DNA from: Botryllus schlosseri
Lineage: Eukaryota
Assembly: GCA_051294905.1 (NCBI GenBank)
Contig: CM119375.1
Span: 3,720,001 to 3,784,000 of the forward strand
Length of the DNA: 64,000 nucleotides
Direction: 5' to 3'
The notes beneath the pieces were generated by a model, which saw nothing but the letters and a program-made list of their open reading frames with translations, searched no databases and was not told the origin of the DNA. Each line of letters opens with the position of its first letter. Within the stretch, counting starts at the first letter, position 1. The position numbers were made by a program, and so were the translations under genes. Below, one piece after another: positions 1 to 21,600 of this stretch.

Positions 1-201
1 AAGGTCATAAAAAGGTATCTATGGTGTGCTGTGCATGTTCAAAATATTGTCGGTATGCAACATGCCTCCGTACAAATCGAGATACTACATGACATAACAT
101 ACACTAAGAAAGAAAGGTTGAATGCTACACGAGTATAATCCCACTGGGACTTCAGAGATACTCACACCGTGGAACAAACATGAGAAAACGAAATCACACA
201 C

Positions 202-3200
202 CTGATATCACCGAGTTGATCCTAGTTGTCTGCTTCAGCGTCTCTCCTTTCCTGTAGAACATCGCCGTAGGCTGTGGTTTCCCAGTGAAAGGGATAACAA
301 CATCCACATTGGTGCCGACCTAAATTAACAGAGGAAGTTGCAGTTAAGTTATTGAGTCAGGACTAAAAATAGACGCTGCAGATGACAGCTGGCAGGAGGC
401 CTCCTGATCGCAAGCAGGATTATACACTCGCCTTTTGAGAGATGGTATCATTGAAAAACTGGCTCATGTCAATGGAGGGAGAGATAAGCACTTCACGGAT
501 TGTGACAGCTCCGGATTCTCGAGCGTCTGATATTCCTGACTCATTCTGCAAAGGAAAATGAAATTTGTTCATAAAGCAATTTCCAAATAGGTTTCGAAAT
601 CACTAGCAAAATAAGAGGAGATAGATAGATTCATTTCCACAAGCCACAAGTTCAGGCAAGTGCCGAAATTTGTGATGCAAAACAATGTTTGATTGGTATT
701 GACTGGTACTGGTGATGTAATTATAACCATCTTTGTGTCAACAGAACCCAAAGTTCTTCATTTTTCGAACATTATAATATAGTCATAAAGTGATATATGA
801 TAGTCATAGAATTAAATTTTTGTATGAAGAGAGAAGTAAAATATTTTATAGCAAGATAATATACAATTGAACAGCATATTCATAATGAAATGAACCCGAA
901 TATTTTCGGCTGGCCCTCGTCATGGGTAATCGTGAGCAACTAGTAGAGAATTGGAAAGGTCATTGCATATCAACTATCGTATCCCGAGATATGATGAATT
1001 TTCATGCCGGTGACGTCATATTTTGTGATACGATTGTTGATATACAATGTTCTTTCAAATTCTTTACTAGTTGCTGACGATTACCCCTGACAAGTGTCCG
1101 CTGGATATATTCGCGTACATTTCAATATGAATATACTATTCAATTGCATATTGAAGTTCTTTACCTCCAAGAAGGTCTTCAAGAAAGATAATAATAAAAC
1201 CGATCTAAATTAGATTATTAGATTATTAGAGATAATGTATCATATGAATTTGCAAAAATACAAATCTTAGAACAGCAATGGTAAATATAATGACAAAGGA
1301 TACACATTTACAAATACTTTCTTGTCTTTATGAACGCTTGAGAAATGGGAAGACATATCGAACCTGTGCTCTGACACGGAAAAGATATTCTTTATTCGTA
1401 ATAAGTCCGTCTATCACTTGTCGTAGGTTCTTTGTCGTTGCGGCCACAGTCCACGATGATCTATTTTCTTTCAATGCATATTCGATGACATATCCGGTTA
1501 TTGGAGTGCCTCCGTCATGCTCTGGTCGTGACCATTCCACTGCGCACGACGTGTCCAGGATGTCGGTAATTTCAAGTTGTCCTGGAGTACTGGGCGCTTC
1601 CGATATTTTAACGGCTTGCTTCGTTTCGCAAGGTACACCCATGCCATGTTCGTTTTCCGCTGTCACTCTAAATAACAAAGGTGGGTGAATTTCAAATGCA
1701 GCTTACACATTTGAATCATGTGCTAGTGCATATCGTACATAGACCATACTAATAAATATATATCATCTATCATATATCATGCGGTAGTGCAGACCGTGTC
1801 TCGTACATTTGGTACATGACTTTAATAATATATAAAATGCAGAATATAACATTATATCATCCCTACACTAGGGTGCTGTACACAAGGGTTATACAAAGGG
1901 CTGTACAAGGGTAATAGTATATCGTACATATAACATATATATCATATATCATGCGTTAATCGATATCGCGTCTCATACATATCGCACATGATTTTAATAT
2001 TATGTATGGCGTTGAATGTTGCAAAATATAGCAATAAATATTACTTTATATATAAAAGACGGGATTGCATAGTTGCAAAGAAAGAATGAGCCCTACAATG
2101 CTATTGTAATTGGAATGTACGTTTAAATAAAAGCGTTTTGCTTTTACACTTAAAAACAGATAATCTGATGAAAGCTGGCAAATATGAATTGATAGTTACT
2201 GATAATTATGGGGAATGTCATATCAGACATCAATCTAACTAGTGATTTATACACAAGGGTACTTGAACAACTGAAGAATTATATAACAACTTTTATGATG
2301 GAATGAATCGGGCTGTACCTGAAGAAATAAGATTCTCCCTCTTGTAAGCCAGTGCACTTGTACGCAGTTCTTGATATAACGGAACCAACAACTTGCCACG
2401 CTTTTCGAGTTGATATTCGTTTTTCAATTTGATAATTGGTTATGACTGAGCCACCGTCAGCGTCAGGTACGTCCCATGACAAATTGACGTGTTCCAAAGA
2501 CATATCTTTCACTTTCAAATCCTTCACCGGCCCCGGCGTATCAATAACTTTGACCGTTATCGATACGGCTTTGGAGCCAGAAGAGTTTTCCACGTTCAGA
2601 GTGTACCTGCATAAACGAAACGTAGATAAGACAACTGTGAGACGTATTCAATCTCCATTTAACAAGGTAGAGTCTTGGATATTACAATACTATATGCTAG
2701 TTGACAAATTTATTGGAAAAATATACAATGACTTCTTTATAAGTAAATTTTACGGGATAGACCAATGTGAGCCATAATCGGTTTTTGTGACATGCGTAAT
2801 AAGCAGAGGTAGTAAAAGTCAGGGTTGTAACCAAGTCACAGTCAATCTCACTTTTATAGTTTTGACTCGACTCACGTCAAGTCATTTTCAGTTCATCCCT
2901 GAGTCAAGTCCGAGTCCAAGTGTTTAGCGAGTCCGAGTCCAAGTCATTATGTTCACTGTTCTGTTTTCAGATCAATCCGGTTCAATGCACTTATTTCAAT
3001 TCTGGTCGAATGATATAGAATGTCCTGCATTCATAATATCTAAATTTTCCGCAATTTTAACAATTTTTGGCCCTATTTTCCAAGTATCAGGACTGATAAT
3101 ACCAATAATGTGGAGCTTTACTATACTTTGAAGTTGCAAAGAAATGTCAGTCGTGGCCGTCCTAGTCTCGAGTCATATGACTTGGTTCGAGTCATATGAT

Positions 3201-3630
3201 TTGGTTCGAGTCATGCAAAATGACTGGAGAACAAGTCGAGTCAATAGAAAAATTGACCTGAGTTGAGTCATTTCAAGCTTTTGAAAAAATGACTCGAGTC
3301 AATTTGAGTCACCAAAAAAATCGCGACTCGAGTCGAGCCATGACTCAAGTAATTACAATCTTGCTGATAACCTTTGGTGACATGCACTGAGTGATGCAAT
3401 AGATATATTTACCGTCCTGCGTCGTCTCTGGTACAGTTGTCGATGAACAACGAGCTTGAAAAGTCATTCGTGTCCGTGATGGAGTTAGGATTGAAATCAC
3501 CATTCTCCTTTGTCCACTTTACGACAGGCGTTGGTCTTCCGCGAATAGCGCAGAACATACGAATAGCATTCCCTGCTTTTACTGTGATATACTGCCCTGT
3601 GTGCGGGTCTGTTTCTATTTCAGGCGCGAT
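202..3630 (-). CDS. TTN: TTN C-zone super-repeat 5, first 3.5 domains (Ig-F-F-Ig...), continues beyond the window
   Basis: Exons 3413-3843 (part), 2319-2606, 1364-1667, 432-545 (GC donor; [12 protein letters not shown]...DTISQK) and 202-319 ([17 protein letters not shown]...). The last two are not in the ORF track. Confidence 0.88.
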
Positions 3631-6600
3631 TTGTATGTCTTTAGGTTGGTACAGCTGCTCAAGCTGATTGAACTCTCCCGGTCCGGCTTCGTTGACAGCA
3701 CGAACTCGTATTTTGTACTCTTTGTTACCATGTAAACCGGTGACGGTGTATTTGGTGTCTTGCAATCCAGACGACGGGGAGCATACGGCCCAATCTTCTT
3801 CCTCTGCAGATTCGGGTAGTATTTCCACCAAATAGCCCGTGATCTAAATGTTAAAAACGAATGAATTGGGATCATTTTGGGTCGGTAATTTTTGTGGAAT
3901 TACTTTGCTTTTGCAACTAATGCAACTTGAGCTGTCTTTGACGATTGATTTTGTTTGCTCCTGGCTTTATTAATCTATTATTCTATTATCCTACTATCAT
4001 TATTATTAATATAATATGCGTCATTGCTTAGTTATGGTAAGGTTGCGAATAAAGGTGATCGCTATTTATAGTGCGCTGATGGCTTACCTCGTACACAGCA
4101 GATTTGAAATAGTTTTTTAAGAACACAGCAGCGACGAAAAGAGAATATATTAACTGCATTTCGTGAGAGGTATCCCTAACACTGGTGTCATTCAAATTAA
4201 GATAATATCAAGTAGGACCTTCATGATACCTCATGCTTACCGTGAGAAATATATATAAGAACTGTTATGTAAGTAATATTGTCATATTTTTGTTGAATAA
4301 TAATGCTTTTTGTAAAATATTATGTATATAACCGAATTTGGAATTGTTTCAATATATATCACATGCTGGGCGGATGGCAGTCAACAAATCAGCGTGTTCA
4401 CGGTGTCCGTGTTTATGAGAAAGGCTATCTTAGTATGTCACGTTAACAAATTGGTTCACATATTTAACGCCTTGACTTTGAGAAAACATCAATTGCACAG
4501 CAGCATACTTAATACGTATACACAATCAGTCTTTTAGAATCAGATGACACAATAACCCAAACACAAGCTTTGCATTATAGGGATGAGAATACTTACCTCG
4601 CTTCCGCCATCGTAAGTAGGCGGGTTCCAAACCACAGTGATACTGCTTTGCGTGGTATCAGTCACTTTTGGTGCGCGTGGTTGACCAGGAGGATATATCG
4701 GGTCTTGAACTTTGACGGTGTCTGAGCAAGCACTCGGTTTGCCGATACCTTCAGAATTTTCAGCGTAGACCTGAAATTTAATTCATGTGGAATTTCGGGT
4801 AACGTCATATCTTCCCCATAAACCAGTGCAATTTCCAATGCATGTCAAAATTAATTAAGGGTATAAAATTTTTAAAACCACGTTTTCTCTATGTTTCCGT
4901 GGGTCCTAGTTGGGGCTAAAGCCGTTCAAGAGATATTGGCAAATATAGTGAATTTTGGAGTTATAAACATTTTTGAAACCAAGTTTTTTATCTGTTTCCG
5001 GGGTTCTATAGTAAAGGTTTTGGGATCAGATTGTATAACTCGAAGATTTACATCTAAATCCTAGTTGTGGCTAAAGCCGTTTAAGATATATTGGCAAATA
5101 TAGCAAATTTTAATATTACTTATTGAGACTTATTACAAACCTGGAATTCATATCTTTGTCCCTCTAGCAATCCTGTGATCTTAGATCTATTCTCCGGTAT
5201 CGCTCTCATCGTGACTTTAGACCACTTGGCCGCCAGCTTATCACGTTTTTCGACGATATAGTTTGTCACTTCCGCGCCACCGTCATCAGTGGGTCGGTCC
5301 CAAGTTAACACCAGACCCGTTCTAGTGATATTGCTGGCACTCGGCTTTCCAGGAGGTCCGGGCACGTGGAATGGATTTTTCATGACCGCCGGTTGAGATT
5401 CGACCACGTCTCCAACTCCAAAAGTATTCTCAGCCCGTACTCTGCATACAACAAATGTGATAAGATAATCTTTATCTGCCATCTGTGCAAATCAGTAACA
5501 TACGAAATGCAATTGGGTGAATTGTGATATACATATAAGCAAGGTATAGATGAGGATCGATATAACGGAGTCGTTTAATCCGAGCCACTCAGGCCCGGAT
5601 AATATTACAAAAGAAGCCGCTAGCCTCAAAACTTAAGATTTCCGAAATATAAAATATGAAGAAGCAGATATCATCATGGGAAAATAGGAAATTAAATAAA
5701 TAAATAAGGTCATTGCCAAACAATTATTCTGTATCTTCAGAACAATTTGTCAAAACATTGTTTGGTAAAATACGTAGACCAAACATTAAGTTATCTATGA
5801 ACTTTGCAGTATCCGAAAATATCCAGATCATGTGCTTACCGGAAAATATATTCATTATCTTTCACCAAATTGGAAATCTTTATGTATCGAGACGGTACAT
5901 TTGAAGACACCAATGACCAAGATACTCTACTGGTTTCTCTCTTCTCCACGACGTAGTTTGTGATTTCAGAACCACCGTTTTCGAGAGGCGTGTCCCACGT
6001 TAGGGAGCATTTGTTGGCGGTAATGTCGCCTACAGTCAAATTGCCAACGGCGCCTGGTACGTCAAGGACCTTCACTTGTACCGTTAATGATCTTTCGCCG
6101 GCGTCATTCCGCACATACAAAGTGTATTGTCCTGAATGTAAAAAAATGATCATTTACTATTCAAATAATAAAGGAATTTTATGAATTTTCATATACAATA
6201 TTCAGTGTCAAAACTGGTTTCATATTACAGCCGTTAACTAGTATAGAGTTTCAGTTCCATAGTTACATGTTCTAACCCTAACAGAAATGTATATTCATTA
6301 AAGTCACATCGAGTGTGCTAATATTCCTAGCGTAATCTGGCAATTTAGTGAATGGAGTCGATATCAGTTTATAAAAAACACCTTCCGTACATGACTAAAT
6401 CAGATGTGTCACGATACTTTCCAGGTAATACAAGCAATAGAGATTGGAAACTTGTCTCAGGTCTGCAAAAATTATATATTATTGAAAGTCAAGTATAGGT
6501 TCAGAACTTTGGAAGTTAAGATCACCCATGGACTCGCACAAGTCAAATTAGTCGCATTTATCGAAAGATGTGTGTTACCACCTTACTGGACGCTCTTTAG

Positions 6601-9600
6601 ATAATCTTACAGTGTACGAGTTGCAATTGCATTATAATAAACAACATTTGTGATATATAAAGACTGGTACATAACAAAAATTTCATTTTGAGACAGCAAA
6701 AAGGTTGCCAATCTCAGCAAGAGTAGATAACATGGTAGACTATTAGTAGAGTAATATACAAATGAATGAATGAATACTTACCGCTATCTTTTCTGCTACT
6801 CTCAAAGATATTGAGAGATGACTGTGTAGTAGTACGACCCAATTTAATTCTGGGACACGTATCCAAATCCCGACCATTTCTCGTCCATCTGACTGCTGGC
6901 TGAGGCTTCCCGTAAATTTTAGCCTCAAATTGAATCGCGTCGCCAGCTTTGACGGTGATTCCGTCGCTTAGTTTTGACTCATATTCAATATACGGTGGTT
7001 CCAATTCGTCACGGCAAATAACAGGGCTGGTGGGCTCTGAAGGCTCGGACAATGTACCTGCGAGAGAAAATACAATGGTATCCATTTCAAAAAAGTGTTG
7101 AAGGTACAGAACTTCAACGTACAATTAGATAATGTATTCATATTGAAATAAACCCAAACGTTCGGGTTTATTACAACATAAATATTAAATATATCATAAT
7201 AGAGAAAAAGCAAAGCAAGAATTACCAATCGCGTTTTTGGCTATAACCCTGAACTGATGCTTTGAATTTTCAGTGAGCCCATCAATTTTGAAGCAGGTTT
7301 CGGTGACGTTGCTGAAGTTGCATTTGTACCATTTTTCAGTCGGCAATTCGCATTTTTCGATATTATAACCAGTCAAGGTACTGCCGCCATCGTATTCCGG
7401 CTTCTTCCATTCGATAGTCACATATCTGCTTGCGACTTGTATAACCTCTGGCTTGGTGGGAGGGTCGATCGGGTCTCTGCATATGACGCTATCGGAAACC
7501 TTGCTGACAGGACTGATTCCGGCAGCGTTTTCCGCGTAAGCTCTGAACTCATATTCCAAACCGTTTTCTAGTCCGGTGACTTTAAATTCAGTTCCGGGTA
7601 CGACGATCTTGTTTGCTTTCTGAAATGCGGAAAGTGCATCGTAAATTATCAGAACCTTGGACCAGATAATGGAGCAGCAGTATGGGCAAACAGATTTGGT
7701 TAAAGTAATCATAGCTAGTATTGAAGAAGTAGAAGTGAGGCCATAAATTTCTATACAATTACAAGTACACGAGGTGTTAAAATTATTTCAATTAGAAAAA
7801 AGACTATTATGAAATGATTAAAAATAAATAAATTGATAAAAAATATGCGATTTTACCAAAAAAATGAAACTGTCATAGGGTTTATTTCATTCATTTCACA
7901 CATAAAGTAATGTGAAACTATCCAAAACAACAAAAAGTGAGTGGTTTTGCCTAAAAATCAGTTAAAAGAGCTTATTGGAGGTACAGAACTTCGTTATACA
8001 ATCGATTAGTATATTCATATTTAAATGAACCTGAATATTTTCGGCTATCCCTCGCCGGGGGTAATCGTCACCAATTAGTGATACGATAGTTGATCTACAA
8101 TTTTTTTTTCAAATTCTCCACTTGTTGCTGACGATTACCCCTGAGGAGTGTCAGCCGAAAATATTCGGTTTCATTTCAATACCAATATAGGCTACTATTC
8201 AATTGTACGAAAACAGGCCATGAACTCGTCGTTGGGAGGGGTCGTTCACACTTTCATTTGTGTGCCGTGGAAGCTACTTTTATCAAAATACGCCAGCCAT
8301 GACTGTGTCAACAAAAGAAGTTTGTGTACCATCAAAAATAGTACATTAAACACTCTCTTATTCGAAATTTCATGTTGGTGACGTCATGATGACGATCGTT
8401 GATATACAATGTTCTTTCCAATTTTCTACTAGTTACTGACGATTACCCCCAACGAGTGTCAGCCGAAATTATTCGGGTTCATTTCAATGTGAATATACTA
8501 ATCAAAACCAGTTGTGCAGAAGTTGGAGTAATTTGAAACCAAATGTACAGCAACTTTTTTGGGTGTTCAAGAAGATTTTGACTACTGCACTACTGCACTA
8601 CTATTTTTGTCCTTGATTTTTTTGCGGCATATACACCGACTCATGATACACATGCACACAATCTGTACTAATGCATATCATGAGCGCATGATACGCATAT
8701 GCCGCTGGACAAGGAAGTGCAGATATAGCCTTAACGGCTTTCTAAGTCATGCACCACCCCTCCATGCTATCCCAGTAATGCATGAGCACCAAGCAGGGAA
8801 GTCATGGATACCAGAGTTACTAATCAGGTCTTTGGTCTGACCCGGCCGGGGAACGAACCCACAACCTACCGATCAAGATGCTGGACGCTTCACCATTACG
8901 CTATCTTGTCGGTAAGGTCGGATAAATTATTGCGAACAGGCAAAACCTACTTAAATCCTCCCAAAAAATGAGTTCTTCGTTACAGTTCTGGACGCAAAGA
9001 GTCAATTACTAATTTGCATTTGTCACTTGTTTAAACAAGCAAATTTATAATTTCAGAACTGTGTTTATCATAAATAAGCATTTAAAGTAAATCAAGGTTC
9101 CTACCCTCCATAAAATAGAGTTCCGATCTTTCATTTCAACTTGATAGCCGGTAATTGGCGAGCCCCCATCTTGAAGAGGTGGCTGCCATTTCAGCACCAC
9201 CGTATCTTTAGTGGCCCGCACAATATCAGGTCTCCCTGGCGGGCCAGGTACCGTAAAGGCGTGTTTCGCTATTATCAAGTCCGACGTCAAAGCGGGTCCC
9301 ACACCAAATCGATTTTCCGCCCTTATCCTAAACACGTATTCCGTCCCATTGACCAATTTTGGTGCTTTGATCGTTGTACGAGCGCAAGCAGCCGATACAG
9401 TTGACCACACCTGAACGTAATAATGTCATTTTAAAATAATTACAAAAATTATACTACGTGATAATTAGAGCCAATTAAAAAAAATATTGGTATCAGTCAT
9501 TAGATGTAAAAGATGTTAGCAATTCATATGACGTCGTAACATGGTAGCAGGAAGTCAGTGAACTATAATCTGCGATTGGTATACTTAGGATATTAATATA

Positions 9601-12600
9601 TTTCTTATAGCTCACAGGCATCAAGATGCAGCCATTCTATTTTATTTCATGTCCAATATGGTTGTTCAAAACTAACTATTTTCTTCAAATGTATTTGGTT
9701 ATTTGAAGAAAACTGTTAGCTTTGCCAAAAAAAGTGCTGCACACCAAATTTAACTAAATTCCAACATGTAAATGAGAAGCTAATGGTGTTCAAATTTTGG
9801 ATTTGTATTAGCATAATTTATGACGGGCATTCTATCATTAAAAATTATAAAATTTTCCACCGTAACTACCATTTTTATGAAATCCAAAATTTTGCACACC
9901 GATAATATTGCTTCTACTATTTGGAAATAAGCAGAATTTCATGTTCATCGTTTTTTCTAGACAACTTAGCAATTTTGTGGGGTTGACGGTTGAATTTCAA
10001 AAAAAAATTGATTCATTTTTAATATATTAAAAATTTTCTAATTCTAGTAGCTAATTCTGGTTGAAATTGAGATAAATTATGTGTCCAGCGTTTTTTAAGT
10101 CAACCTAACAATTTTCTCGATACCTGTCAAATCCGAAGAAAAAAGTTGTCTTTGGACACTCATAATTCTCAAGCTTAGCACAGGCTGTAAAGTTGTGCAA
10201 ATAAATGCTCTGAAGTTTTGGAAATGTATCAAAATTTAGATCCTTCGAATATCGGCTAAATATATCAGGGTTATCGGTGAGGGTACTAGTTATCAGTTTT
10301 ATCGTCATAATAGTCATAATACAAACCATGCTTGTCGCTTCTCTCTTCTCTACGATGTAGCTCGAAATAGGACTTCCGCCAACAAAAGTCGGTGGTTCCC
10401 AAGAGAGGTGCACAGAATCGGCAGAGACGGAATCAAATTTCACAGGACCGGTTGGAGCGCTGGGCTTGTCGTAGACCACTATTTCTACTGGAGATTTTGC
10501 CGTGTTTGATGAATTCACCGCTGTTATTACATAGTCGCCGGCGTCTTCGACAACACAATCTAAAATAAAGTGTAGCTTTCATTAGTTGTATCATAAAGAA
10601 TCAAACAGTGTTTAAGAGTATCAGCTAACAGATGTCAAGCTGTAGATAATTTGTACAACAAAAGCATAAGCTGATATATCAATCAGGTCTTGATGACATT
10701 GTCAATGAGTGTTTATGTTTGTTCATCAATACCATATAGGTGGGCAGTCACCCTCTTATTTGATAATAACCCTCTGGTTATCATGCATGAAGGACATAAA
10801 TTACACTGTGCTACATATTGTGATATATTATTGAGCTGTAATATTAATTAGGCAACATATAAGCTGAAGTCATTCTATCGCGTTGTATGAGTATAAAAGA
10901 AATTGAGTCCTGATATTTATTGAGTCATTTCTGAGCATTGAAGATCTTATTGTTAGGACAGAACTCTCAGGTTAAGTAGCCAAGCAAGTCAGCTTATCAT
11001 ATTGGTTAGCTATGCTTACTGCTACAGGAACTGACAAGTCGTTTTAACCATGTAACTGCTATTATACAGCAAAACACATTGGCGATACACTTGAACTTAT
11101 TATTAGTTAGGTGTCAGATTATACTACCGTATATCTTGAAAAACAGTCTAACCGTTATGTAAGGAAAGCTAAATAAATTTCGGTCGTGTTAGCATTTGTC
11201 TTATTTATACGAATCACTGTACCTTTTAGCGTCAGCGTGCTCGAGTTATCATCATTTTCCAAATTGACTCGACTTGTCTGCTTAATCTCTTGCCCGTCCT
11301 TGTACCATTTCGTTTCTGGGAATGGTTTGCCGGAAATAGACACTCTCGCTTTCAAATCTGACCCTTTCTTGCCGTAAAATATCAGCTTCGTCAGTCCGTT
11401 CGTATCGATATGAGCCGGTTCCATTTCGTCCTTCGCCACTACCGATTGGAACAATTCTCTGGCTTCCCCTACGCCTTTCTCGTTGATAGCTTTGACGCGG
11501 ACGTGATAGGCTTTGCCTTCTGATAATTTTGAGATCGTTCCGACAAGTTGCTTGACCTGTCCGCCTAATTTCCATTCGTTTGTATCCTTCTCTTTGTACT
11601 CCATCAAATAACCTTCGAATAAATATTTTATTCAATTTAACTTTGTGGTTATATGCTGTATCTGGGGATGCGCATAATTGAGTGCCAGATGTGGAAAGCT
11701 CGCAAATGGACTTTTTGTACCACAAAGAATATAATACCAGTTTTACATCACATTTATGATTATTCAGTATTTTTTTCGATCATACCTATTCCATCACACT
11801 TTGTTACAATGATGTGAGTTTATCACGATTTCACAGATATGGCATTTCCATTGAAGTGCATATCTTTGTATTACATGTTTCTTATGCTGTGATATGACCA
11901 ATCGAGGTTTAAAGCCTTCAACAGTGGAAAATGGTAAAAAAAACTATAAATCTTGTTGGTAAAGTTAACTCTTAATGACAAGAAGCATGTTATTTTAGTA
12001 CTCTCCCTGCCAAATTACAATCATTAGAATTGTTACCTATTCAAACCATTGGCAGGACCATACCTGTGATTTTACTGCCTCCGTCCGAGTCTGGTTTTGT
12101 CCAAGATAGAGAGATGCTTTTGCCGGTCGTGCCGGTGACTTCCAGCCTGCCGGGACCGCTTGGAATTTCGGAGGCCTTGATGGCACCCTTGGTCTCGCAC
12201 GGGGGACCAGTTCCGTATTCGTTTTCGGCCATTACCCGGAAGTAATAGCTGCTTCCCTCTTCCAAATTTGGTACCTACAACAACAACTCATAATTCACTA
12301 TGAATTTTCTTAAATTTATATGAAAGTATCGTGCCACAGAAAGTCATATCAAATTAAGTAACATATTCCCAAGGAAAAGATATTAAAACCTCAGTGGGTA
12401 TCAGCTTTTGATGAATATAATACCTTGAAGCTGTTGCGGACGCAATTAAGGGTCACTGTCGACCACTTTTTCTTAGTAGTTTCCTTCTTCTCAACAATAT
12501 ATCCGGTGATAATGCTGCCACCATTATTTAAAGGCGCATCCCAAGACAGCGTAACTGACTCTTTGGTGACTTCTTTGGCAATAAGATTAGTCGGGGCGGA

Positions 12601-15600
12601 TGGGCTGTCCAATACTATTACAGAGACGGCTGAGGTCTTTGTTCCAGCACTGTTCTCGAGCGTCAAAGTATACTGCCCGGTGTGATCTCTGCAACATACA
12701 GTTAAATAGTATATTTGTATTGAAATAAACCCGAATATTTTCGGCTGACACTCATCAGGGGTAATCGTCAGGCACTAGTATAGATTTCAAAACTACTTTG
12801 CATATATGAATGTTGATCTATTATTATGGTATACCTTGCAGATCTTTCAATCAGCATCAACGTAGTACTATCGCTTGTGTTCACGTTAGCTTGATCTGGT
12901 AAGAACGTGTCGTCCTTGCGCCAAGTGACAGAAGGAATTGGACTTCCGTGATACGTCGCTAGTATCCTGACCGAGTTGCCTGCTTTGACCTTCAAAGCCT
13001 GTCTCAAGCTGACGTCCATATCCATATCAGGAGCCGATAAGATGTCTCGTACCGAGACTTGACCTGGTACTAAGGCTGGTTCTCCAACGCCTGATTGATT
13101 TGTAGCAGACACTCTGTAACGAAAACAGATTTGGGAATAACAATGTTAACTATAATAACGTCAAAATGCGAGCCCTCCAGGTTTAGTTTTGCTTGAGAAA
13201 CGAAAAACTGATAAGTAAAATTGAAAAATGTTATAAACATAACCAATTATACACAAGTACCCCAAATCGTAGTCATAATTCGTTAGTGACCCGATCTGAT
13301 GATCCCTGGCATGGGGTACACGCAATGGTGAGATTAAAACCTCTAAAAGTGCTGACGTCACAATATTTGAGTCAAATATACTGAAGTAAAAAAAAAATTC
13401 TGGTTATTTATAGAAATATTTTTACCGAATTTTGTACTCCGCATTTTCCGACAATCCTTTGACCGCGAATTCGTGATCCTTGAATCCAAGCGGCATATTG
13501 CATTTGACCCAATTTACTTCGTCTTCTCCCGCTTGTAATTTCGCGTATTCCACCAAATATCCCGATATATCTTGCCCACCATCGTAATTCGGCTTTTTCC
13601 AAGTCAAATCCACGCTGTTCCGAGTGGTTGAGACCACGGCTGGTGACAATGGTGGCCCTGGTGGGTACACCGGGTCTACGATGCTGATGTGAGGTGAAGG
13701 TTCTGACGGCTCGCCTGGGCCGGCTGCGTTTTCGGCAATGACACGGAACTCTACTTCTGAATCTTCAACTAGTCCAGTCACCCTGAAACGCTTTTCAGTG
13801 ATGTTTTTCTTGGTTGCGCGCACCCAGCGTGTGCCTTTCCTGATATAGAAATAAATTTTGTATTGAGTTTATGGCAATGTTGAGATTTCTTGAGTCACGT
13901 TTTACGTGACTCGAGTGACTACCCTCAAAGTCGCTCAACTTGTATGTTTTGACTCTTGTCTCAGAGTCAAATTTTAAAGTCCATTTTCAAGTCATTGAGT
14001 ATTCTACCACACAGCATTGTGGACTTCTCAGCCTCTTAAATTGACTGTGTCATCAATATTTTGGAGTAGTAGTAGTAGTAGTATTTAATACCAACACAGG
14101 TTGATGACAAATGTAGCAATGTAGAAAGGGAGAAGGTATTGAAATCCAGACATATCAATTTGTTATACATAAATGTGCTTTGAAAATACTTTACCTGTCT
14201 CTTTTCTGTAGAATATAGTTGGTGATTTCAGCACCGCCATCGTTCTTTGGTCTTTCCCAAGTTACGACACAAGAGTCTTTGGTGACATTAGCAATTTCCG
14301 GCAGCGAGGGCTTTCCGGGGGCCGTGAATTGGTTTTCGGCACGGAAGGGCTCGGATTCTTTAGGCTCCCCTCGTCCGTATTTATTGACGGCCATCACGCG
14401 CACCACATACTCGTTGTGCTCGATGAAATTTGTGGCTTTCAGTGAATTGCCTTCAGCCTGAAAACATGGGATCACAAATTGCGCTCTTTCTTAGTATTGA
14501 TGATTTTATACAATGCATGCCATTCAAAAGATTTGATTTCTTTTTTGTCTCAATTCAAAATTTCTTGAAATTTTCAATGTCATAGAAAAAAAAATCCATT
14601 AGCCCTGGGGTTCTTAACCGGTGGTACGGGTCCATGAAAAGTCAAGGCTGAAATTACAACTATAAACTATAAAACTACATTGTCCTTATGTGTCCTTTTT
14701 GACTCATATACAACTTACGATAAAGACAATATTAATTGCATTTGAACTGGTAATCAGCTCCCTAAATTTCGTGGTTACGGCATCCACATCCAAGTAATCA
14801 CCAAAAAAAATTTCGAAGTCAGTGCTACAAAATGGATAAGAACCATTTTGGATTTATAAGATCATGAATTGATAAATTACCAATACATAAGGCTAATATT
14901 GTAGATGGACCTTTATTTTATCCCTAGATCGTCAGAAAGCAAGTCAAAAATTTATAGATAAGGAACAACGCATCATCAAGTCACATAATAACCAACTCAC
15001 ATTGCTATCGATTAGAGTCCACGTTAGTCTGCTTGTCTCGCGTTTTTCCACCACATAGTGGGTGACATTGGCGCCTCCATTGTCACTGGGGGTAGCCCAT
15101 GATATTTTCACTCGTCCTGCACTGATGTCAGACACCGTTACAGAGCCGGGTGGTCCAGGTCTATCCAGAACTTTGACGGTAACGCCGAGAGTTTTTGCCC
15201 CGCCAATGTTTTTCAAGTGAAGCACGTATTGACCGGAATTGGTGCGCCGTGCGTCGCGTATGTGTACTGCGCTGGACGTATCACCGTTTTCAATACCGAG
15301 TGCTGGATTTTCAAGCAATTTTTCGCCATCTTTTTCCCAAGCAATATCAGGTCTGGGTTTGCCTATTGGAAAACAGTAATGTATTTAGCGTTAACTGCTT
15401 CAGTTTGAGAGATATGTCCTTTGTATGTAATAGTGCTCCATTTACTTGAACATGGCAAAGTTGATTTATAACCTGATGAGGCAGTCATATATCCAAACTT
15501 TCATCAATTCAAAAACACCACAACATTGCCATATAATTAAAAGATAAGAGGGTGCTGAAATGACTTGGAATAGCTTTTTAATAAAATACATATGTATGAC

Positions 15601-18600
15601 TAATTAATATTAGCAATGTTGTAATTACTGTATTTTATAACAGGCACCGCTTATAATCAAGAGATTCACCTTGAATTTTATTTAACATCGATAACTAGTA
15701 AATCCATTTTTCCAATATCCATCACAAGATGAAGGAAGCATTCTAATCTTTTTAAACAGTGAAATCGGGAAAGTCCAATACCTAGTTTTAATGCTACTAA
15801 CATCAAATGATATCGGCAGAAATTATTTCACCTGCTATCTTCGCTTCTAGTTTTACTTGTTCGCCGGCTTTCACAACAATAGTGTCTCGGTATTTGGCAT
15901 CAAATTCGATTCTCGGTGGTATAACCTCATCGCGACAGGTAACAGGATAGGATTCGTCAGAATAGTCGGATGACGAATCGGCTGCGTTTTTAGCCAGTAT
16001 CCTTCAAAATAACTCAATGTCACATATATAATATATCACATATACCATATATCACACATACAATATATCGCATATATCACGTTTATCATATATTACATAT
16101 ATCATATATACCACATATATCAGATATCATAGTCATTAGTCGTGATCTAACCTGAATATGTATTCAGCACCTTCGTTTAGACCAGTCACAGTAAATGTAG
16201 TATCAGCAACATTATTGAAGTTACATTTGAGCCACCGACCATCGGGCAATTCTTTCTTTTCGATGACATAGCCTGAATAAGAAATATGCCATGTTATACA
16301 ATATTTCCACACACATTACATGGTTATACCAGTAATTCTTGTTCCGCCATTGTACTCAGGCTTCTTCCACTGAAGCTTAACCATATTGCGTCCAACTTCG
16401 AGTACCTCAGGTCTGCCGGGTGTGTCAATTTTGTCTCGGCATATCACGGACTCGGACGGTTTGCTGAATTTACCATTTCCGGCCATATTTTCGGCACACA
16501 CTCGAAACGAGTATTCCAGATTTTCGGTCAAACCTCCCACCTGGCAGTTGCAATGCGATATTTTATGTTCCACCACAGAGATATTTATTAACTTACCTTT
16601 GCGGAAGTCGTTTTTACAGGACTGCGAATAGCAGGCGTCCACAGGATCGAGTTTTTATCTTTCTTTTCAACATGATAAGCAAATATCTTTTCTCCTGAAT
16701 GACATCATGATTTCGTGTGATTCAATCATCAAAGTCAATAAAAATAATGGCAGATACACGGCCAGAGGTGGTCAGCAATGAAGTGCTATCACTCATTTGG
16801 AGTACTTAAGAAGGTTTTACTTTTGTTAGGTAATAAATTAAATTGAAGATGGAAGGATATACATGAATTATCCTATATAAAATATATTGATACAAATCCT
16901 ACCTCCATCATGATCCGGAGCTTGCCATTCAAGTGATACGGAATCTGATGTGACATTAAGAATGTCTGGTATGCCTGGTGCCCCTGGTTCCTTGAACGGG
17001 TATTCAATCAACACTGGTGTGGAATCCAACGGATCCGATCGACCGAATCTATTGTCAGCATATATGCGGAATATATATTCATGGTCTTTGTCTAGCCGTG
17101 ACACTTTCAAAGTGGTTCTTGTGACAGCGCCTGCGACTTCAGTCCATTTTTCGTTATCTTTCTTGCGTTTTCGCACCAGGTAACTGTTGATTGGTGCTGC
17201 GCCGTCAAATTCAGGAGCTGCCCATGTCAGAGTAACGGAATCTCCGTTTATGTTACTGAATTCGACCGGGCCTTTTGGTGGACTTGGTCGGTCGAACACA
17301 ACAACCTGTCGAACGCACAGTGAGATTCATCATCTGCTACCATTTCTACTAGCAATACGGTAAGTTTTTGGTATTAAGACGGGGGAATTGATAATATAGG
17401 CACAAGGTATTGAAACAGTTCATATTATGTCTTATATACTCATACTAAAGCAGGGCCCAACGATTTGAGCACTGCATACAAATCAAGTATAAATTGCAAA
17501 AATCTTAGTGTAGTTGCGGAATAATGATATTAGGTAGTTCTGCAACTCAGAATCATTTCATCAACAAGAATTATAACTACAATACTTTCGTCTCAGTGTG
17601 GGAGTCTTCAAGCATGCAGGGCAAGGAACGTACATAACTTTCGTTGTTAGTCAAATCTATATTTCTATATTACATTGCTCTTGCATAAGAGATACTTATA
17701 TGCACTCTCTTACTCTGTGTAATGTCACTACTACTAGAATTAGAACACTCAACTCTAAGCTTAATGCTTGACTCGTAAATAACTCAAATCAGGTTCTTGA
17801 TTTGCACAAGCCTGATTACATAGTTTTTCGAAATATTTATTGTTACAAACCTTCACAGGTATAGTTTTGGTACCAGCAGAGTTGCTAACGACGAGATCAT
17901 ATGTGCCAGCATCGTCTCGACAACAATTTTTTATATTCAGCATTGCATCGTTGCCGACGGTCTCAGCGTTGACGCGCTGGTTTTCTTTCAGATTTTCTGC
18001 ATTTCTCATCCATTGCACAGTAGGCATTGGCTTGCCTGCGAAACATATAGATTTAGAGACACCGTCATTTAAGTCAGTGCAAAAAGAATTAGTACCAAGC
18101 AATGGCAACTTCAGAGCGATATGCGACCCTGCTTTGGCGTTGATAGATCCCATATACAGGGCACTGAGATCAATGTCCGGCTTTGAAATATCATCCTTCA
18201 CCAGAATCGGATGTCTTGTCTGTAATGGTTCCCCTTCGCCGACTTGATTTACGGCCTTCACCCGGACGTGATACTCAGATCCCTCGTGCAAATCAGCAAT
18301 AAACGCACTGTAAGTGAATGAGACATTCATATTGAAATGAGCCAGGATGTTTTCGGCAGCCATTAGTCAAAGGTAATATATCCGCAGCTAGCAGAAAGTT
18401 CCAAAAAAAATTCAATATAAGCAATCTCAGTAGAAACTCTTGGAAGTACAGGACTTCAATATAGATTTGAATAATATATTCATATTGAAATTCACCCAAA
18501 TAATTTTGGCTGATCCTCGTCAGAGGTTAATCATCAGTAACTAGTTGAGAATTGAAAAAAATATTGTACAGGAACATCGTATCATCGAATGGTATAAAAA

Positions 18601-21600
18601 TTCAAATAATAAAGGCGAACAAATCGCTAAAGCCAAATCTGTACTATTTTTATATTATACAAAAACTCCTTCTTTTGTTCACCTCGAATATTCGAATTTC
18701 GTTTAAAGGGGTTTGTGTATAATCTAAAGTTAGTACATTGATCTTACGATATTTGTTCGCCTTGATTATTCGGATTCTCACGCCTGTAACGTCATATTTG
18801 ATGATATAACTGTTGACATACACTGTTCTCTATAGTTATTTACTAGTTACTGACGAATACCCCTAATGAGTAACAGTGGAAAATCGCAGGTTTATTTCAC
18901 TATGAATATATCATTTGAATAATAATCGGAAGAATTGAAGGATTTGATATACTCACGATAGTTTCGAAGTCGTGCATTTCGTAATCCAAGGTTCTGAGCC
19001 GCATTTTTGAATTTCAACGACGTAACTGCTGATGGCGCTTCCACCATCAGACTCAGGCTTCACCCAAGAGATTGACAAAGATGATTTCGTTACATCGTCA
19101 ACAGTTATAGATTTTGGAGATCCCGGCACTTCACACATCATTACAGGCCGTTTTGTGTCTTCCGGCTCTCCGATACCGTACTTGTTTTCTGCCATAACCC
19201 TGAAGAAATACTCTTGACCTTCTTCCAATCCTGTGACTTTGAACGTGTCCCTGTGGACTTCAGTAGCGACTGTAGTCCAAGCTTTCCTCGTGGGCATACG
19301 TTTTTCTACCAAGTAATTAGTGATGGCAGCGCCTCCATCTAGTTTCGGTTCATCCCATAACAAGAACGCAGAGCTTTTAGTGACATCTTTCACTGCTAGA
19401 TTTTGTACCGGTCCAGGTGCATCCAACACTTTTACGTTAAGCGACAAAACTTTAGTGCCGGCCGCGTTCGCGAGAAGCAATTCGTATTTTCCTGCATCAC
19501 TACACTTAGCTTTCTCAATGATTAGCAAACTGTATGACGAAGTGGTCTCAACAGTGCTTCGATCTGACGGAATACCGCCCTCTTTGGTCCATGTTATTTC
19601 AGGAGTGGGGCGTCCACGTATGGTTACAAACATACGTATGGATCCCCCGGCGCGGACTGTGATGGTTTTTCTCATGTCGGCGTCTAGTTCGTAGTTTGGC
19701 GCTTCCAAAACTTCGACCGGTGTCATTTCGTTGCTGGCGTTGCTGGGTTCTGACTTGCCTGCATTGTTGATTGCGATGACTCGGAATCTGTGAGTAGCGA
19801 ATGAAGGAAATCAGTAAAAGCAGTGAGCTGTAACAAGTAGTGAAATGTTTCTTTGCTGTTATTCTAATTCGAATCAAATTTTTGTGATTTTTTATTATCT
19901 AGTTTTAATTCTAATTGAGTTTATGGCTTTCCCGAAAGTGCTACAGGCGAACCATATGGTACCATTCAATCTTGCTATAGAAACATTTGCTATTCCTATG
20001 CTTATAGTAATGGACTCATGGATTAATGGATTTCATACGAACTGAACTTCATTTAATGTCAAAAGTTTTGCGAATTCACTAATTCCATTCTAATTTGGAT
20101 AAAAATTGTGTAGCTATAATTATAATTCGAATCTAATTTGGGAAAGCTGAAAAAAGATATTCATTTACCATGATACAGGTGCCATTTTGCCAATCGTTAT
20201 GAAAATTTCACTCATAATAACGATGAATAACGTATCGCAAAACCATCTTCTACTTTCAAAGAAAGGTACAAAAGTAGAAAATTCTGCCTCATAAAGAGTC
20301 GCAAAAAAGTAGAAGTATTTTGAAACATACTTTGAAGATATAGCAGATAATTACCAGTCCGAGAGCGTTACTAACCTGTACGTAGTGTCAGATTTCAAAT
20401 CAGGAATCACGCATTCTTCCTTCGTTATTTTCCTGTTCGTACTGCGAGTCGGCACAAAATCAAATGATCCAGCAATGACGACTTCAACCTCATATTCTGT
20501 TATAGGCGCGCCTCCATCGTAAGTGGGTTTACTCCAAGACAGAGTAATTGTGCTTTTGGTCGAATCTGACATATGCGGCGCCGTAGGTGTGCCTGGTACG
20601 TCTGTAATTTTTTTTGTTTAGTAACAGGCGCACATGATTTTGACAGCCTTTCTTACAAATTGGATCTCGTGCTATCGATATGTTAGAGCTGTCGCTGATT
20701 GGCCCAATCCCGGCTTTATTTTCCGAAGACACTCGGAATTCATATTCAGTATTTTCGTTCAATCCAGTGACGCGAAGTCTGTTTTCATGGACAGGTTCCT
20801 TGTTACATCTGAATATATATTTATAAAAACGATGTACAATGGAATGTTGAATCGTCAGCAACTATTACAGAATTGGAAAGAACGTTGTATATCAGTAATA
20901 TACTGTGCTTATTCTTTTTTTTTGGCAAATTTTTCAAAATCTGCACCACTAGTCATTTCAGTCTTCATCAAATGATTTTGACATTTCAAAAACCCAATGC
21001 ATTACCCACCTAATCCATTTAAGACCGGATTTGGTCTTTCGCTCCAAGTTGTATCCGATAATCTCACTTCCACCATCCGATTCTGGCCTCTCCCAAGTCA
21101 CAGTCATGGTGTTGCCGGTCGTTTTGGTAACTTCAGGCTTGCCAGGCTTACCGGGTACATCTACGCAAATACACAGCTTCGTATATCCCTTCTACGTTAT
21201 ATTGGAATGGGTATAGAAATGTACCAAATGGATTCTTTGCGATCACCGATGCAGATTCAGCAGGCGGGCCAACACCGTATTTATTCTGAGCCGATACTCG
21301 GAAAATGTATTGGTTTCCGGCGATGAGTTTGGTACAGTTGATGTTGCAGTGCATGCCAGATTCACCAACCTACGAAATTTCAGAAGTCTCATTTTAAGTA
21401 AATGCAGCTGTGCAGTTGCAAGGTCATTGCGCTCTAAATATAATGCAAAAATATTATTGGCATCCTCCGTTTTCTTCAAGAAGCAGACATATTTGAATTG
21501 CAGCTAAGATTTTAAGAAGCGGAATGTAACCTCCATGAAAATCATTCAGCTGCAGTACGAATACAGTGGATTTCTGAGAAACATGGATACTCAATGAATT

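What the first reader, a model, noticed from the sequence alone, without database searches (positions are those of the whole stretch)
202..20656. Sharp switch in intron logic at ~20.6 kb: candidate fossil of a giant titin exon re-invaded by introns
Seen: from 64000 to 20602, 38 of 57 domain junctions carry a phase-1 intron exactly in the linker (e.g. DPI G|D, KVL G|D) and two more carry phase-0 introns there. The last is intron 20602-20656, just before the 11th domain of C-repeat 2. Beyond it, none of the 26 junctions has a boundary intron; all 28 introns interrupt domain interiors, in mixed phases. Mean exon size also rises from ~189 to ~281 nt. Established: human TTN has mostly domain-sized A-band exons, but one ~17.1-kb exon (exon 326, meta-transcript numbering) encodes a large block of the C-zone. 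My rough, memory-based residue count puts its 5' end near the last FN3 of C-repeat 2, i.e. about the same place; this is unverified. Inference: the intron-free block predates the split from vertebrates, and this lineage later gained dozens of new introns inside it. That would be a built-in natural experiment on intron gain into a giant exon.
Basis: partly seen in the sequence, partly recalled or inferred. Interest (0 to 1): 0.88.

Follow-up and report, generated by a model that had tools for sequence, protein, structure and literature searches.

The report
Fossil giant titin exon, intron-invaded
In this tunicate's titin gene the ancient introns between protein domains stop exactly where the 17-kb giant titin exon of vertebrates begins, so that intron-free block probably predates the tunicate-vertebrate split and was later broken up by about one new intron per domain.

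Summary
Observation confirmed almost to the digit. My gene model of the minus-strand titin A-band gene has 116 exons, 8,210 aa and 84 Ig/FN3 domains.

- **Before the switch:** 38 of 57 domain junctions carry a phase-1 intron at one fixed linker position. Two more carry phase-0 introns within 4 nt of it.
- **After the switch:** past intron 20602-20656, which sits before the 11th domain of C-repeat 2, 0 of 26 junctions do (Fisher p = 1e-9).
- **Exon size:** the mean rises from 190 to 281 nt.
- **RNA:** contigs confirm 12 junctions around the switch.

Giant-exon ORFs from many vertebrates start with exactly that FN3 domain, followed by five 11-domain repeats plus Ig-FN3 (58 domains). Mouse exons 305-325 encode C1+C2. 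The 5' ends therefore coincide.

A related tunicate contig shows the same switch: 12 of 17 canonical boundary introns before it and 0 of 45 after. So does a more distant homolog.

- Interior introns are about as dense upstream (0.84 per domain) as downstream (0.99). The block is marked by missing boundary introns, not by extra invasion.
- These introns are old, because the relatives share them.

In the amphioxus D-zone nearly every junction has a boundary intron, and no interior position is shared with the tunicate. That favours lineage-specific gain.

Not tested: the block's 3' end and the amphioxus C2-C8 exon map.

The scan has noted the same gene twice before (s1-274255, s1-231987).

The parts
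1..64000 (-). Titin/connectin A-band gene segment. It runs through both ends of the window: 116 exons, 8,210 aa, 84 Ig/FN3 domains (last FN3 of a D-zone repeat, 5 D-zone repeats, C1-C4, start of C5).
   Evidence: Gene model and HMM domain string. Pfam I-set and fn3 on exons. Collinear 50% identity to Ciona savignyi titin H2YLF2.
20657..64000 (-). Pre-switch part. Of 57 domain junctions, 38 have the canonical phase-1 linker intron and 2 have near-canonical phase-0 introns. There are also 48 interior introns (0.84 per domain). Mean exon 190 nt.
20602..20656 (-). The last canonical boundary intron: 55 nt, GT-AG, phase 1, IARDPI|YVPGTPT. It sits before domain 58, the 11th domain (FN3) of C-repeat 2. 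This position matches the intron preceding the vertebrate giant exon.
   Evidence: Model. The RNA contig's loose end at 20601 continues with the reverse complement of the end of exon 20657-20808. Orthologous introns in L002 (7208-7301) and L005 (4028-4102).
202..20601 (-). Boundary-intron-free block: domains 58-84, 28 exons with a mean of 281 nt. It holds 27 introns in mixed phases, 26 interior and one 13 nt from a boundary. 0 of 26 junctions carry the canonical intron.
   Evidence: Exon lengths and phases are conserved in L002.
18957..19787 (-). Largest exon (831 nt). It covers the end of FN3-58, Ig-59, FN3-60 and the start of FN3-61, so three junctions lie inside one exon. In both relatives it is split by a phase-0 intron.
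   Evidence: An RNA contig spans 18957-19591 and joins 18307 to 18957 and 19787 to 20376. L002/L005 have 658+173 nt.
17306..17850 (-). Phase-0 intron 13 nt upstream of the Ig62|FN3-63 boundary (KTIPVK|VVVFDRP). It is the only near-boundary intron of the block in this species and is shared with L002 and L005.
   Evidence: RNA loose end at 17848.
18036..18095 (-). 60-nt, in-frame, stop-free interior intron in Ig-62, at G|KP. It is easily misread as coding sequence.
   Evidence: An RNA contig skips 60 nt here. Exons of 212+185 nt are conserved in L002 and L005.
12689..12834 (-). 146-nt phase-2 intron in Ig-70. Almost its whole length is one copy of a dispersed MITE-like repeat.
   Evidence: Repeat families D2-D4 and D6. 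Alignment to other copies. An intron is present at the same position in L002.
320..431 (-). GC-AG intron (donor GCGAGT) after a 114-nt exon (432-545). The FN3-83|Ig-84 junction lies inside it.
   Evidence: The orthologous 114-nt exon in L002 has a GT donor.
31175..31856 (-). GC-AG canonical boundary intron (phase 1, LLRQAI|ESPRIEL) before Ig-44.
47405..47782 (-). GC-AG interior intron (phase 2) in FN3-22.

Best explanation
The window holds the D-zone and early C-zone of a tunicate titin (connectin) gene. I propose four steps.

1. **Ancestral state.** The chordate gene had a phase-1 intron in every inter-domain linker, the classic 1-1 exon pattern of Ig/FN3 modules. Amphioxus still shows this in its D-zone.
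2. **Loss of a block of introns.** Before tunicates and vertebrates split, one contiguous stretch lost all its introns. It starts with the 11th domain of C-repeat 2 and in vertebrates runs 58 domains to C8-2. The most likely mechanism is recombination with a partly reverse-transcribed spliced transcript, which removes neighbouring introns together. Vertebrates keep this stretch as the 17.1-kb exon.
3. **Gain in the tunicate lineage.** New introns then entered the whole A-band coding sequence at roughly one per domain, preferentially at (A/C)AG|G-like sites. Outside the block they sit on top of the surviving linker introns. Inside the block they are the only introns.
4. **What is seen today.** The switch at 20.6 kb is therefore a sudden absence of canonical linker introns, not an excess of interior ones.

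Shown here:
- the intron map and its RNA support;
- the same switch in two related sequences;
- the coincidence with the vertebrate exon's 5' end;
- that interior introns are not shared with amphioxus (D-zone only) or among paralogous repeats.

Inferred: the single ancestral loss event, its mechanism, and that all block introns are gains.
For: 1. **Sharp switch.** 38/57 versus 0/26 canonical phase-1 junction introns, p = 1e-9. RNA contigs confirm the junctions across the switch.
2. **Relatives.** Same switch at the same intron in a relative with 69% aa identity: 12/17 before, 0/45 after, reaching C7-1. Also in a 55-58% identical homolog, L005.
3. **Vertebrate giant-exon ORFs.** P0001 starts at an FN3 start directly after a pyrimidine-tract read-through. 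P0001, P0003 and P0363 share the domain string F+5x11+IF. P0001 aligns at 65% identity in one register to whale-shark titin. The clusters are large and one includes a human titin chain.
4. **Literature.** Mouse exons 305-325 = C1+C2 (PMC5648799). The central C-zone is a single long exon (PMC10665226). The largest exon is 17,106 bp (PMC12198301).
5. **Amphioxus.** The D-zone has the canonical phase-1 intron at nearly every junction, so it is the ancestral class. 0 tunicate interior introns coincide with amphioxus ones at any of three registers.
6. **Paralogous repeats.** Interior introns are not shared between equivalent domains of C1/C2 or C3/C4/C5 (my reading of the table).
7. **Exon flanks.** Interior and block introns sit in AG| (52-59%) and |G (48-63%) contexts, against 17% and 10% for linker introns.
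8. **Density.** Interior-intron density is similar on both sides: 0.84 versus 0.99 per domain.
Against: - The 3' end of the block lies outside the window. At the local coding density that is somewhat further than 58 domains would predict.
- The number of the super-repeat (C2) rests on counting 11-domain repeats in the window and on the mouse paper. Domain-by-domain similarity cannot separate registers (227 versus 226 versus 223 mean score).
- The amphioxus exon map inside C2-C8 could not be fetched, so loss in the tunicate-vertebrate stem versus earlier is open. Shared interior introns inside the block are not excluded.
- The relative has several near-boundary introns inside the block: FN3 column 9 phase 0 (twice), Ig column 7 phase 0, and FN3 columns 11 and 14 phase 1. 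These could be slid remnants of linker introns rather than gains.
- No DNA of the vertebrate exon's acceptor was read. Its phase is inferred from the ORF's N-terminal peptide.
Confidence: 0.7

Rival explanations
1. Convergence. The tunicate lineage lost the linker introns of this stretch on its own, for example by its own cDNA-mediated conversion in the most conserved central C-zone. The match with the vertebrate exon's 5' end is then chance, or reflects a shared hotspot.
For: Tunicates are known for heavy intron turnover. Upstream, 19 of 57 junctions lack the canonical intron, so loss is common. Losses and gains continue among the three tunicate sequences. The 3' end is unverified.
Against: The switch falls on exactly the same junction out of 83 in the window, roughly a 1-2% chance. 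It is a run of 26 empty junctions (45 in the relative) against a 67% background. The pattern predates a 55%-identity divergence.
Confidence: 0.15
2. Retention. The interior introns are ancestral. The common ancestor lost only the linker introns in this block, and vertebrates later lost interior introns everywhere, which produced the giant exon as a by-product. No intron gain is needed.
For: Amphioxus also has about one interior intron per domain. Some position classes recur in both lineages (FN3 column 70 phase 0, columns 58-59 phase 0, Ig column 44 phase 0).
Against: 0 orthologous coincidences between tunicate and amphioxus interior introns at any register. No sharing among paralogous repeats. 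The frequent tunicate class at FN3 column 82 phase 2 is absent from the amphioxus sample. Flanks resemble proto-splice sites. Selective loss of linker introns alone over 58 domains has no known mechanism.
Confidence: 0.1
3. Artefact. The pattern comes from errors in a de novo gene model of a highly repetitive gene.
For: FN3 domain 25 is still incomplete.
Against: RNA contigs confirm 12 junctions across the switch. Exon lengths and phases are reproduced in a compact relative whose 60-120 nt introns leave no room for hidden exons.
Confidence: 0.02

Closest known systems
Vertebrate TTN giant A-band exon (human exon 326 in meta-transcript numbering, 17,106 bp)
   Same: Same gene region. It starts with the same domain (the FN3 that closes C-repeat 2), preceded by an intron at the same linker position. 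It has the same super-repeat architecture. In the relative, canonical linker introns are absent for at least 46 domains.
   Different: In the tunicate the stretch is not one exon. It is cut by about one intron per domain, at non-linker positions and in all three phases. Its 3' limit is unknown here.
Amphioxus (Branchiostoma floridae) connectin/titin gene, I/A junction to D-zone
   Same: Same canonical phase-1 linker introns and the same D-zone domain pattern. It also carries roughly one interior intron per domain.
   Different: The interior introns lie at different positions: 0 shared in 13-27 compared domain pairs. Its linker introns are present at nearly every junction, against 67% in the tunicate. 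The C2-C8 region was not examined.
Intron gain into formerly intronless genes of tunicates (horizontally acquired cellulose synthase CesA, GH6, rusticalin) and into retrogenes
   Same: Spliceosomal introns colonise coding sequence that was intron-free in an ancestor, in the same animal group.
   Different: Here the intron-free ancestor is an internal block of a resident giant gene. It is inferred from the sister lineage, not from a bacterial donor. The comparison with CesA and the others rests on paper abstracts listed and on general knowledge.
Introner or transposon-derived intron gain
   Same: One block intron (12689-12834) consists almost wholly of a dispersed MITE-like element.
   Different: The other block introns show no shared sequence. 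The element also sits inside long introns of both regions. The intron position predates the element, because it is shared with L002. So this is probably insertion into an existing intron.

Membership tests
Chordate-type titin/connectin A-band | Tandem I-set Ig and FN3 domains in 7-domain (Ig-F-F-Ig-F-F-F) repeats followed by 11-domain (Ig-F-F-Ig-F-F-F-Ig-F-F-F) super-repeats | tested here: met
   Domain string of the spliced product: 5 D-type repeats, then C1-C4 and part of C5. Pfam fn3 and I-set on exons.
Chordate-type titin/connectin A-band | Collinear sequence homology to known titins | tested here: met
   50% identity over 5,300 aa to Ciona savignyi titin. 41-43% over 4,500-5,200 aa to vertebrate giant-exon ORFs and whale-shark titin.
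Chordate-type titin/connectin A-band | Titin kinase and M-band region downstream | not testable with these tools
   Outside the window. Only earlier unchecked notes mention a titin kinase, and on another piece of the genome.
Chordate-type titin/connectin A-band | Transcribed and spliced | tested here: met
   RNA contigs of run X1 join the predicted exons. The run's RNA nature is flagged as guessed by the tool.
Homolog of the vertebrate TTN giant exon | 5' end at the start of the FN3 that closes C-repeat 2, after a linker intron | tested here: met
   Tunicate: intron 20602-20656 before domain 58, the 11th domain of C2. Vertebrates: the ORFs start with an FN3 followed by the first Ig of a super-repeat. 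Mouse exons 305-325 = C1+C2. The repeat number comes from counting, not from sequence.
Homolog of the vertebrate TTN giant exon | One uninterrupted exon of about 17 kb | tested here: not met
   27 introns within 202-20601. It is a block free of canonical linker introns, not an exon.
Homolog of the vertebrate TTN giant exon | Spans 58 domains, ending after C8-2 (Ig-FN3) | tested here: inconclusive
   The window covers 27 of the 58 domains. The relative's contigs cover 46 (to C7-1) without a canonical linker intron, and then all contigs end.
Introner/TE-generated introns | Introns of the set share a common mobile-element sequence reaching the splice sites | tested here: not met
   Repeat families occur in about 20 places in long introns on both sides of the switch. 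Only intron 12689-12834 is essentially one element copy.

The most novel reading that the evidence does not exclude
The 17-kb titin exon is not a vertebrate invention. [quoted passage not shown] The tunicate gene then preserves its outline as a block holding only gained introns: at least 27 here and about 60 expected over the full block. That would be a rare, internally controlled set of bona fide old intron gains, with ancestral linker introns beside it as a control. It could be dated intron by intron across tunicates. It could also test why gains land about once per domain, since exon sizes in the block are far more even than random insertion would give.
Probability: 0.6. Interest if true: 0.75.

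Novelty: new variant of a known kind. Interest (0 to 1): 0.68.

Why it matters
- **Age of the exon.** The giant exon is the site of many human cardiomyopathy truncations. This finding would date it to before the tunicate-vertebrate split and show that it arose as one block event.
- **A clean gain data set.** Every intron inside the block must be younger than the block. The same gene supplies an ancestral control class (phase-1 linker introns) a few kilobases away. The two classes already differ in phase, exon-flank sequence and length.
- **Exon size.** The near one-per-domain spacing, and the further splitting of the largest exons in a relative, hint at a limit on exon size in these genomes. 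The size figures are my hand arithmetic on the exon list: CV about 0.5, and all but one exon are 98-431 nt.
- **Practical use.** The intron map flags in-frame 60-nt introns and GC-AG introns that automatic annotation of this gene would get wrong.

I found no paper describing this.

Tried and rejected
- **Orthology by sequence.** Summed domain-by-domain alignment scores at super-repeat offsets 0, +1 and +2 differ by about 1%. The longest BLAST alignments sit in several registers at 41-42% identity. This cannot decide the repeat number.
- **Whale-shark titin P0423 as an anchor across the D-to-C transition.** Its domain string is irregular, probably from missing exons.
- **Salmon locus L001 (P0005).** It lies inside the giant exon (one 8-kb exon) and does not show the exon's start.
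B. floridae L007 reaches only to about D5 plus 9.7 kb.
- **Amphioxus protein models alone.** The B. lanceolatum models end and start in mid-FN3 at C3-11 and C7-11, leaving four repeats unannotated. The B. belcheri model P0392 is in a different register. Neither is informative on exon structure.
- **The amphioxus and Ciona connectin papers** (PMID 21510959, 22245513) are not held.
- **Bulk RNA runs X14, X16 and X18.** They gave no usable titin reads. The X14 joints are cross-mapping reads of the intronic repeat.
- **Walking the relative's contigs further 3'.** All three contigs stop within about 600 nt of each other.
- **A middle exon for FN3 domain 25** (candidate in 44415-44874). It needs a weak phase-0 donor and is left unresolved.
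- **Introner origin of the block introns.** Rejected apart from one intron.

Full report
**What is in the window**

The minus strand carries one gene that runs through both ends of the window. Stop-free segments translate to titin-like FN3 and Ig sequence.

I bootstrapped Ig and FN3 profile HMMs from the window's own domains. I then wrote a dynamic-programming exon chainer that combined HMM coverage, codon usage and trained splice-site matrices, and later allowed GC donors.

After corrections guided by a related genome, the model has 116 exons, 8,210 aa, no internal stop and 84 domains. These are one FN3, five 7-domain D-zone repeats, then the 11-domain repeats C1, C2, C3, C4 and four domains of C5. 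Pfam finds I-set and fn3 on single exons, with a domain junction in mid-exon.

The spliced protein is collinear with Ciona savignyi titin at 50% identity over 5,300 aa. It matches vertebrate titin at 41-43% and amphioxus at 35-38%. The organism is therefore a tunicate, but not Ciona. No same-species protein was in the libraries.

**The observation**

I aligned every domain to the HMMs and gave each intron a column and a phase. One class stands out: phase-1 introns at column 8 of the following domain, in contexts such as DPI|DVPGRPE and KEPD|AAPEVSL.

| Measure | Before the switch | After the switch |
|---|---|---|
| Junctions examined | 57 (1\|2 to 57\|58) | 26 (58\|59 to 83\|84) |
| Canonical phase-1 linker introns | 38 | 0 |
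| Near-canonical introns | 2 in phase 0, 2 and 4 nt away | 1 in phase 0, 13 nt upstream (17306-17850) |
| Mean exon size | 190 nt | 281 nt |
| Interior introns per domain | 0.84 | 0.99 |

- The difference in canonical introns gives Fisher p = 1.1e-9.
- The last canonical intron is 20602-20656, before domain 58, the 11th domain of C2.
- The block holds 27 introns, plus one beginning at 201.

RNA contigs of run X1 skip the predicted introns between 17.8 and 23.3 kb, six of them exactly and four to within 1-3 nt. Their loose ends read from 20601 straight into the end of exon 20657-20808.

The rise in exon size is explained entirely by the missing linker introns, because interior-intron density is about the same on both sides. 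There is no block-specific invasion.

**Related sequences**

A search with the 831-nt exon found ORFs on genomic contigs of relatives.

- **L002, L008 and L009** come from overlapping contigs of two runs. They are 69% identical in protein and have introns of 60-120 nt.
- **L005** is 55-58% identical to both the window and L002, so it is an outgroup or an older paralog. It comes from the same runs.
- **Shared structure.** Exon lengths and phases are almost the same as in the window. All but a handful of introns fall on identical alignment columns and phases.
- **Same switch.** In the relative, 12 of 17 junctions before the orthologous intron are canonical. 0 of 45 after it are, up to the first Ig of C7 (p = 3e-9). 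L005 shows the same switch.

The pattern, and most block introns, are therefore old.

Turnover continues. The window lacks two introns that both relatives have, and L002 lacks one that the window and L005 share.

Inside the block the relative has several introns near, but not at, the canonical site: column 9 phase 0 (twice), Ig column 7 phase 0, and columns 11 and 14 phase 1.

**The vertebrate side**

The protein libraries hold many ORFs of 5,650-5,800 aa called on 20-60 kb genomic contigs. They fall into clusters of 13, 121 and 144 members, one of which contains a human titin chain. I annotated three of these ORFs (P0001, P0003, P0363).

- P0001 begins 'MYTCNLFFKYIFFHL|DVPGPP'. That is a translated pyrimidine tract followed by the start of an FN3 domain. 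It ends '...ATKIT|G'.
- The annotated ORFs all read F + 5 x (IFFIFFFIFFF) + I F, which is 58 domains.
- P0001 aligns to whale-shark titin in a single best register at 65% identity.
- P0003 is only 42% identical to P0001 but collinear from end to end. It shows the same exon in a deeply diverged vertebrate-like lineage.

The literature agrees. The largest human exon is 17,106 bp (PMC12198301). The central C-zone is one long exon (PMC10665226). [quoted passage not shown]

An exon that opens with the FN3 just before a super-repeat's first Ig, directly after the C1-C2 exons, opens with C2-11. That is the tunicate's domain 58.

Sequence similarity cannot confirm the repeat number, because scores at different super-repeat offsets differ by about 1%. 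That step rests on counting.

**The outgroup**

Only the I/A junction to D-zone part of the B. floridae gene could be fetched (L007, protein P0480). I threaded the protein exactly onto the DNA. That gave about 76 introns, of which 71 were resolved exactly.

- The canonical phase-1 intron is present at nearly every junction, so it is the ancestral class.
- There is also about one interior intron per domain.
- None of the interior introns coincides in column and phase with a tunicate interior intron, at any of the three type-consistent registers (13-27 domain pairs).

Interior introns are also not shared between equivalent domains of C1/C2 or of C3/C4/C5 in the tunicate (table).

Exon flanks differ between the classes:

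| Intron class | Preceded by AG | Followed by G |
|---|---|---|
| Linker introns | 17% | 10% |
| Interior introns, upstream | 52% | 48% |
| Block introns | 59% | 63% |

Together these results favour lineage-specific gain at proto-splice-like sites.

**Interpretation**

The simplest history has three steps:
1. Linker introns were present everywhere in the ancestor.
2. One contiguous loss, starting at C2-11, happened before tunicates and vertebrates split.
3. Gene-wide interior gains then occurred in tunicates, and independently in amphioxus.

| Reading | My confidence | Comment |
|---|---|---|
| Shared ancestral block | about 0.7 | |
| Convergent loss in tunicates | about 0.15 | Would need a 1-2% coincidence of position |
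| Retention of ancestral interior introns with selective loss of linker introns | about 0.1 | Contradicted by the lack of shared positions and lacks a mechanism |
| Gene-model artefact | about 0.02 | Excluded by RNA and cross-species conservation |

**Limits**

- The 3' end of the block is outside the window. An earlier unchecked note (s1-231987) reports a second switch 34.9 kb beyond the window start. At this region's density of about 756 nt per domain, that is rather further than the 31 remaining domains would need.
- The amphioxus exon map inside C2-C8 was not obtainable.
- FN3 domain 25 (45053-44262) lacks its middle and may hide an exon.
- The phase of the vertebrate acceptor is inferred from a peptide, not from DNA.

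Noticed in passing
window 840-1145, 7079-7185, 7956-8200, 8392-8507, 12675-12831, 18421-18573, 18812-18882, 20850-20894, 22295-22339, 25919-26075, 27246-27300, 27976-28246, 35767-35946, 38264-38396, 41468-41604, 42475-42581, 46988-47038, 47471-47737, 58749-58974: A dispersed MITE/SINE-like repeat of about 140-300 nt, with copies 60-85% alike and in both orientations. It sits in about 20 places in the longer introns on both sides of the switch. Its stop-free translations mimic ORFs, and it attracts cross-mapping RNA reads (the X14 joints 18487->20850).
   Followed up: partly
window 47405-47782, 31175-31856, 320-431: Three GC-AG introns (donors GCAAGT or GCGAGT) out of 115. A GT-only model mis-splices all three and loses the 114-nt exon 432-545. 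The orthologous donor of the last one is GT in L002.
   Followed up: yes
window 202-20601 versus 20602-64000: Block introns are longer. Only 3 of 27 are 75 nt or shorter, against 34 of 88 upstream (Fisher p = 0.009). Medians are 451 versus 197 nt. Repeat insertions explain only part of this. In the relative all introns are 60-120 nt. Unexplained.
   Followed up: partly
window 18036-18095 and 22902-22961: Two 60-nt introns are in frame and stop-free, so retention would add 20 residues inside a domain without breaking the frame. The RNA contigs show them spliced out.
   Followed up: partly
window 44262-45053: FN3 domain 25 lacks HMM columns 38-71. A candidate middle exon in 44415-44874 (frame with '[10 protein letters not shown]...') would need a weak phase-0 donor. 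This is either a degenerate domain or a missed exon.
   Followed up: partly
L007 (B. floridae CM022903.1:16986075-17056824), 10001-60750: Amphioxus titin has about two exons per domain in the I/A junction and D-zone. About one interior intron per domain sits at positions not shared with the tunicate. This suggests parallel, independent interior intron gain in two chordate lineages, while vertebrates have almost none.
   Followed up: partly
L005 (SRR10746997_27613) and L002 (SRR10746996_4620): Two homologous titin A-band contigs, 58% identical in protein, occur in the same sequencing runs. This means either two species in the sample or two old titin paralogs in one genome. Earlier notes also report a second titin-like A-band on another piece of this window's genome.
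   Followed up: no
proteins P0002 and P0004 (B. lanceolatum XP_066264227.1, XP_066263902.1): The two NCBI models end and begin in mid-FN3, at C3-11 and C7-11. Four whole super-repeats between them are left unannotated. This points to a collapsed or mis-modelled stretch in that annotation.
   Followed up: no
window 202-20601 (exon list): Exon sizes in the block are much more even than random insertion would give. The CV is about 0.5 by hand arithmetic, and all but one exon (831 nt) are 98-431 nt. C4 has exactly one interior intron per domain. The relative splits the four largest exons further. This may be an exon-size constraint.
   Followed up: no
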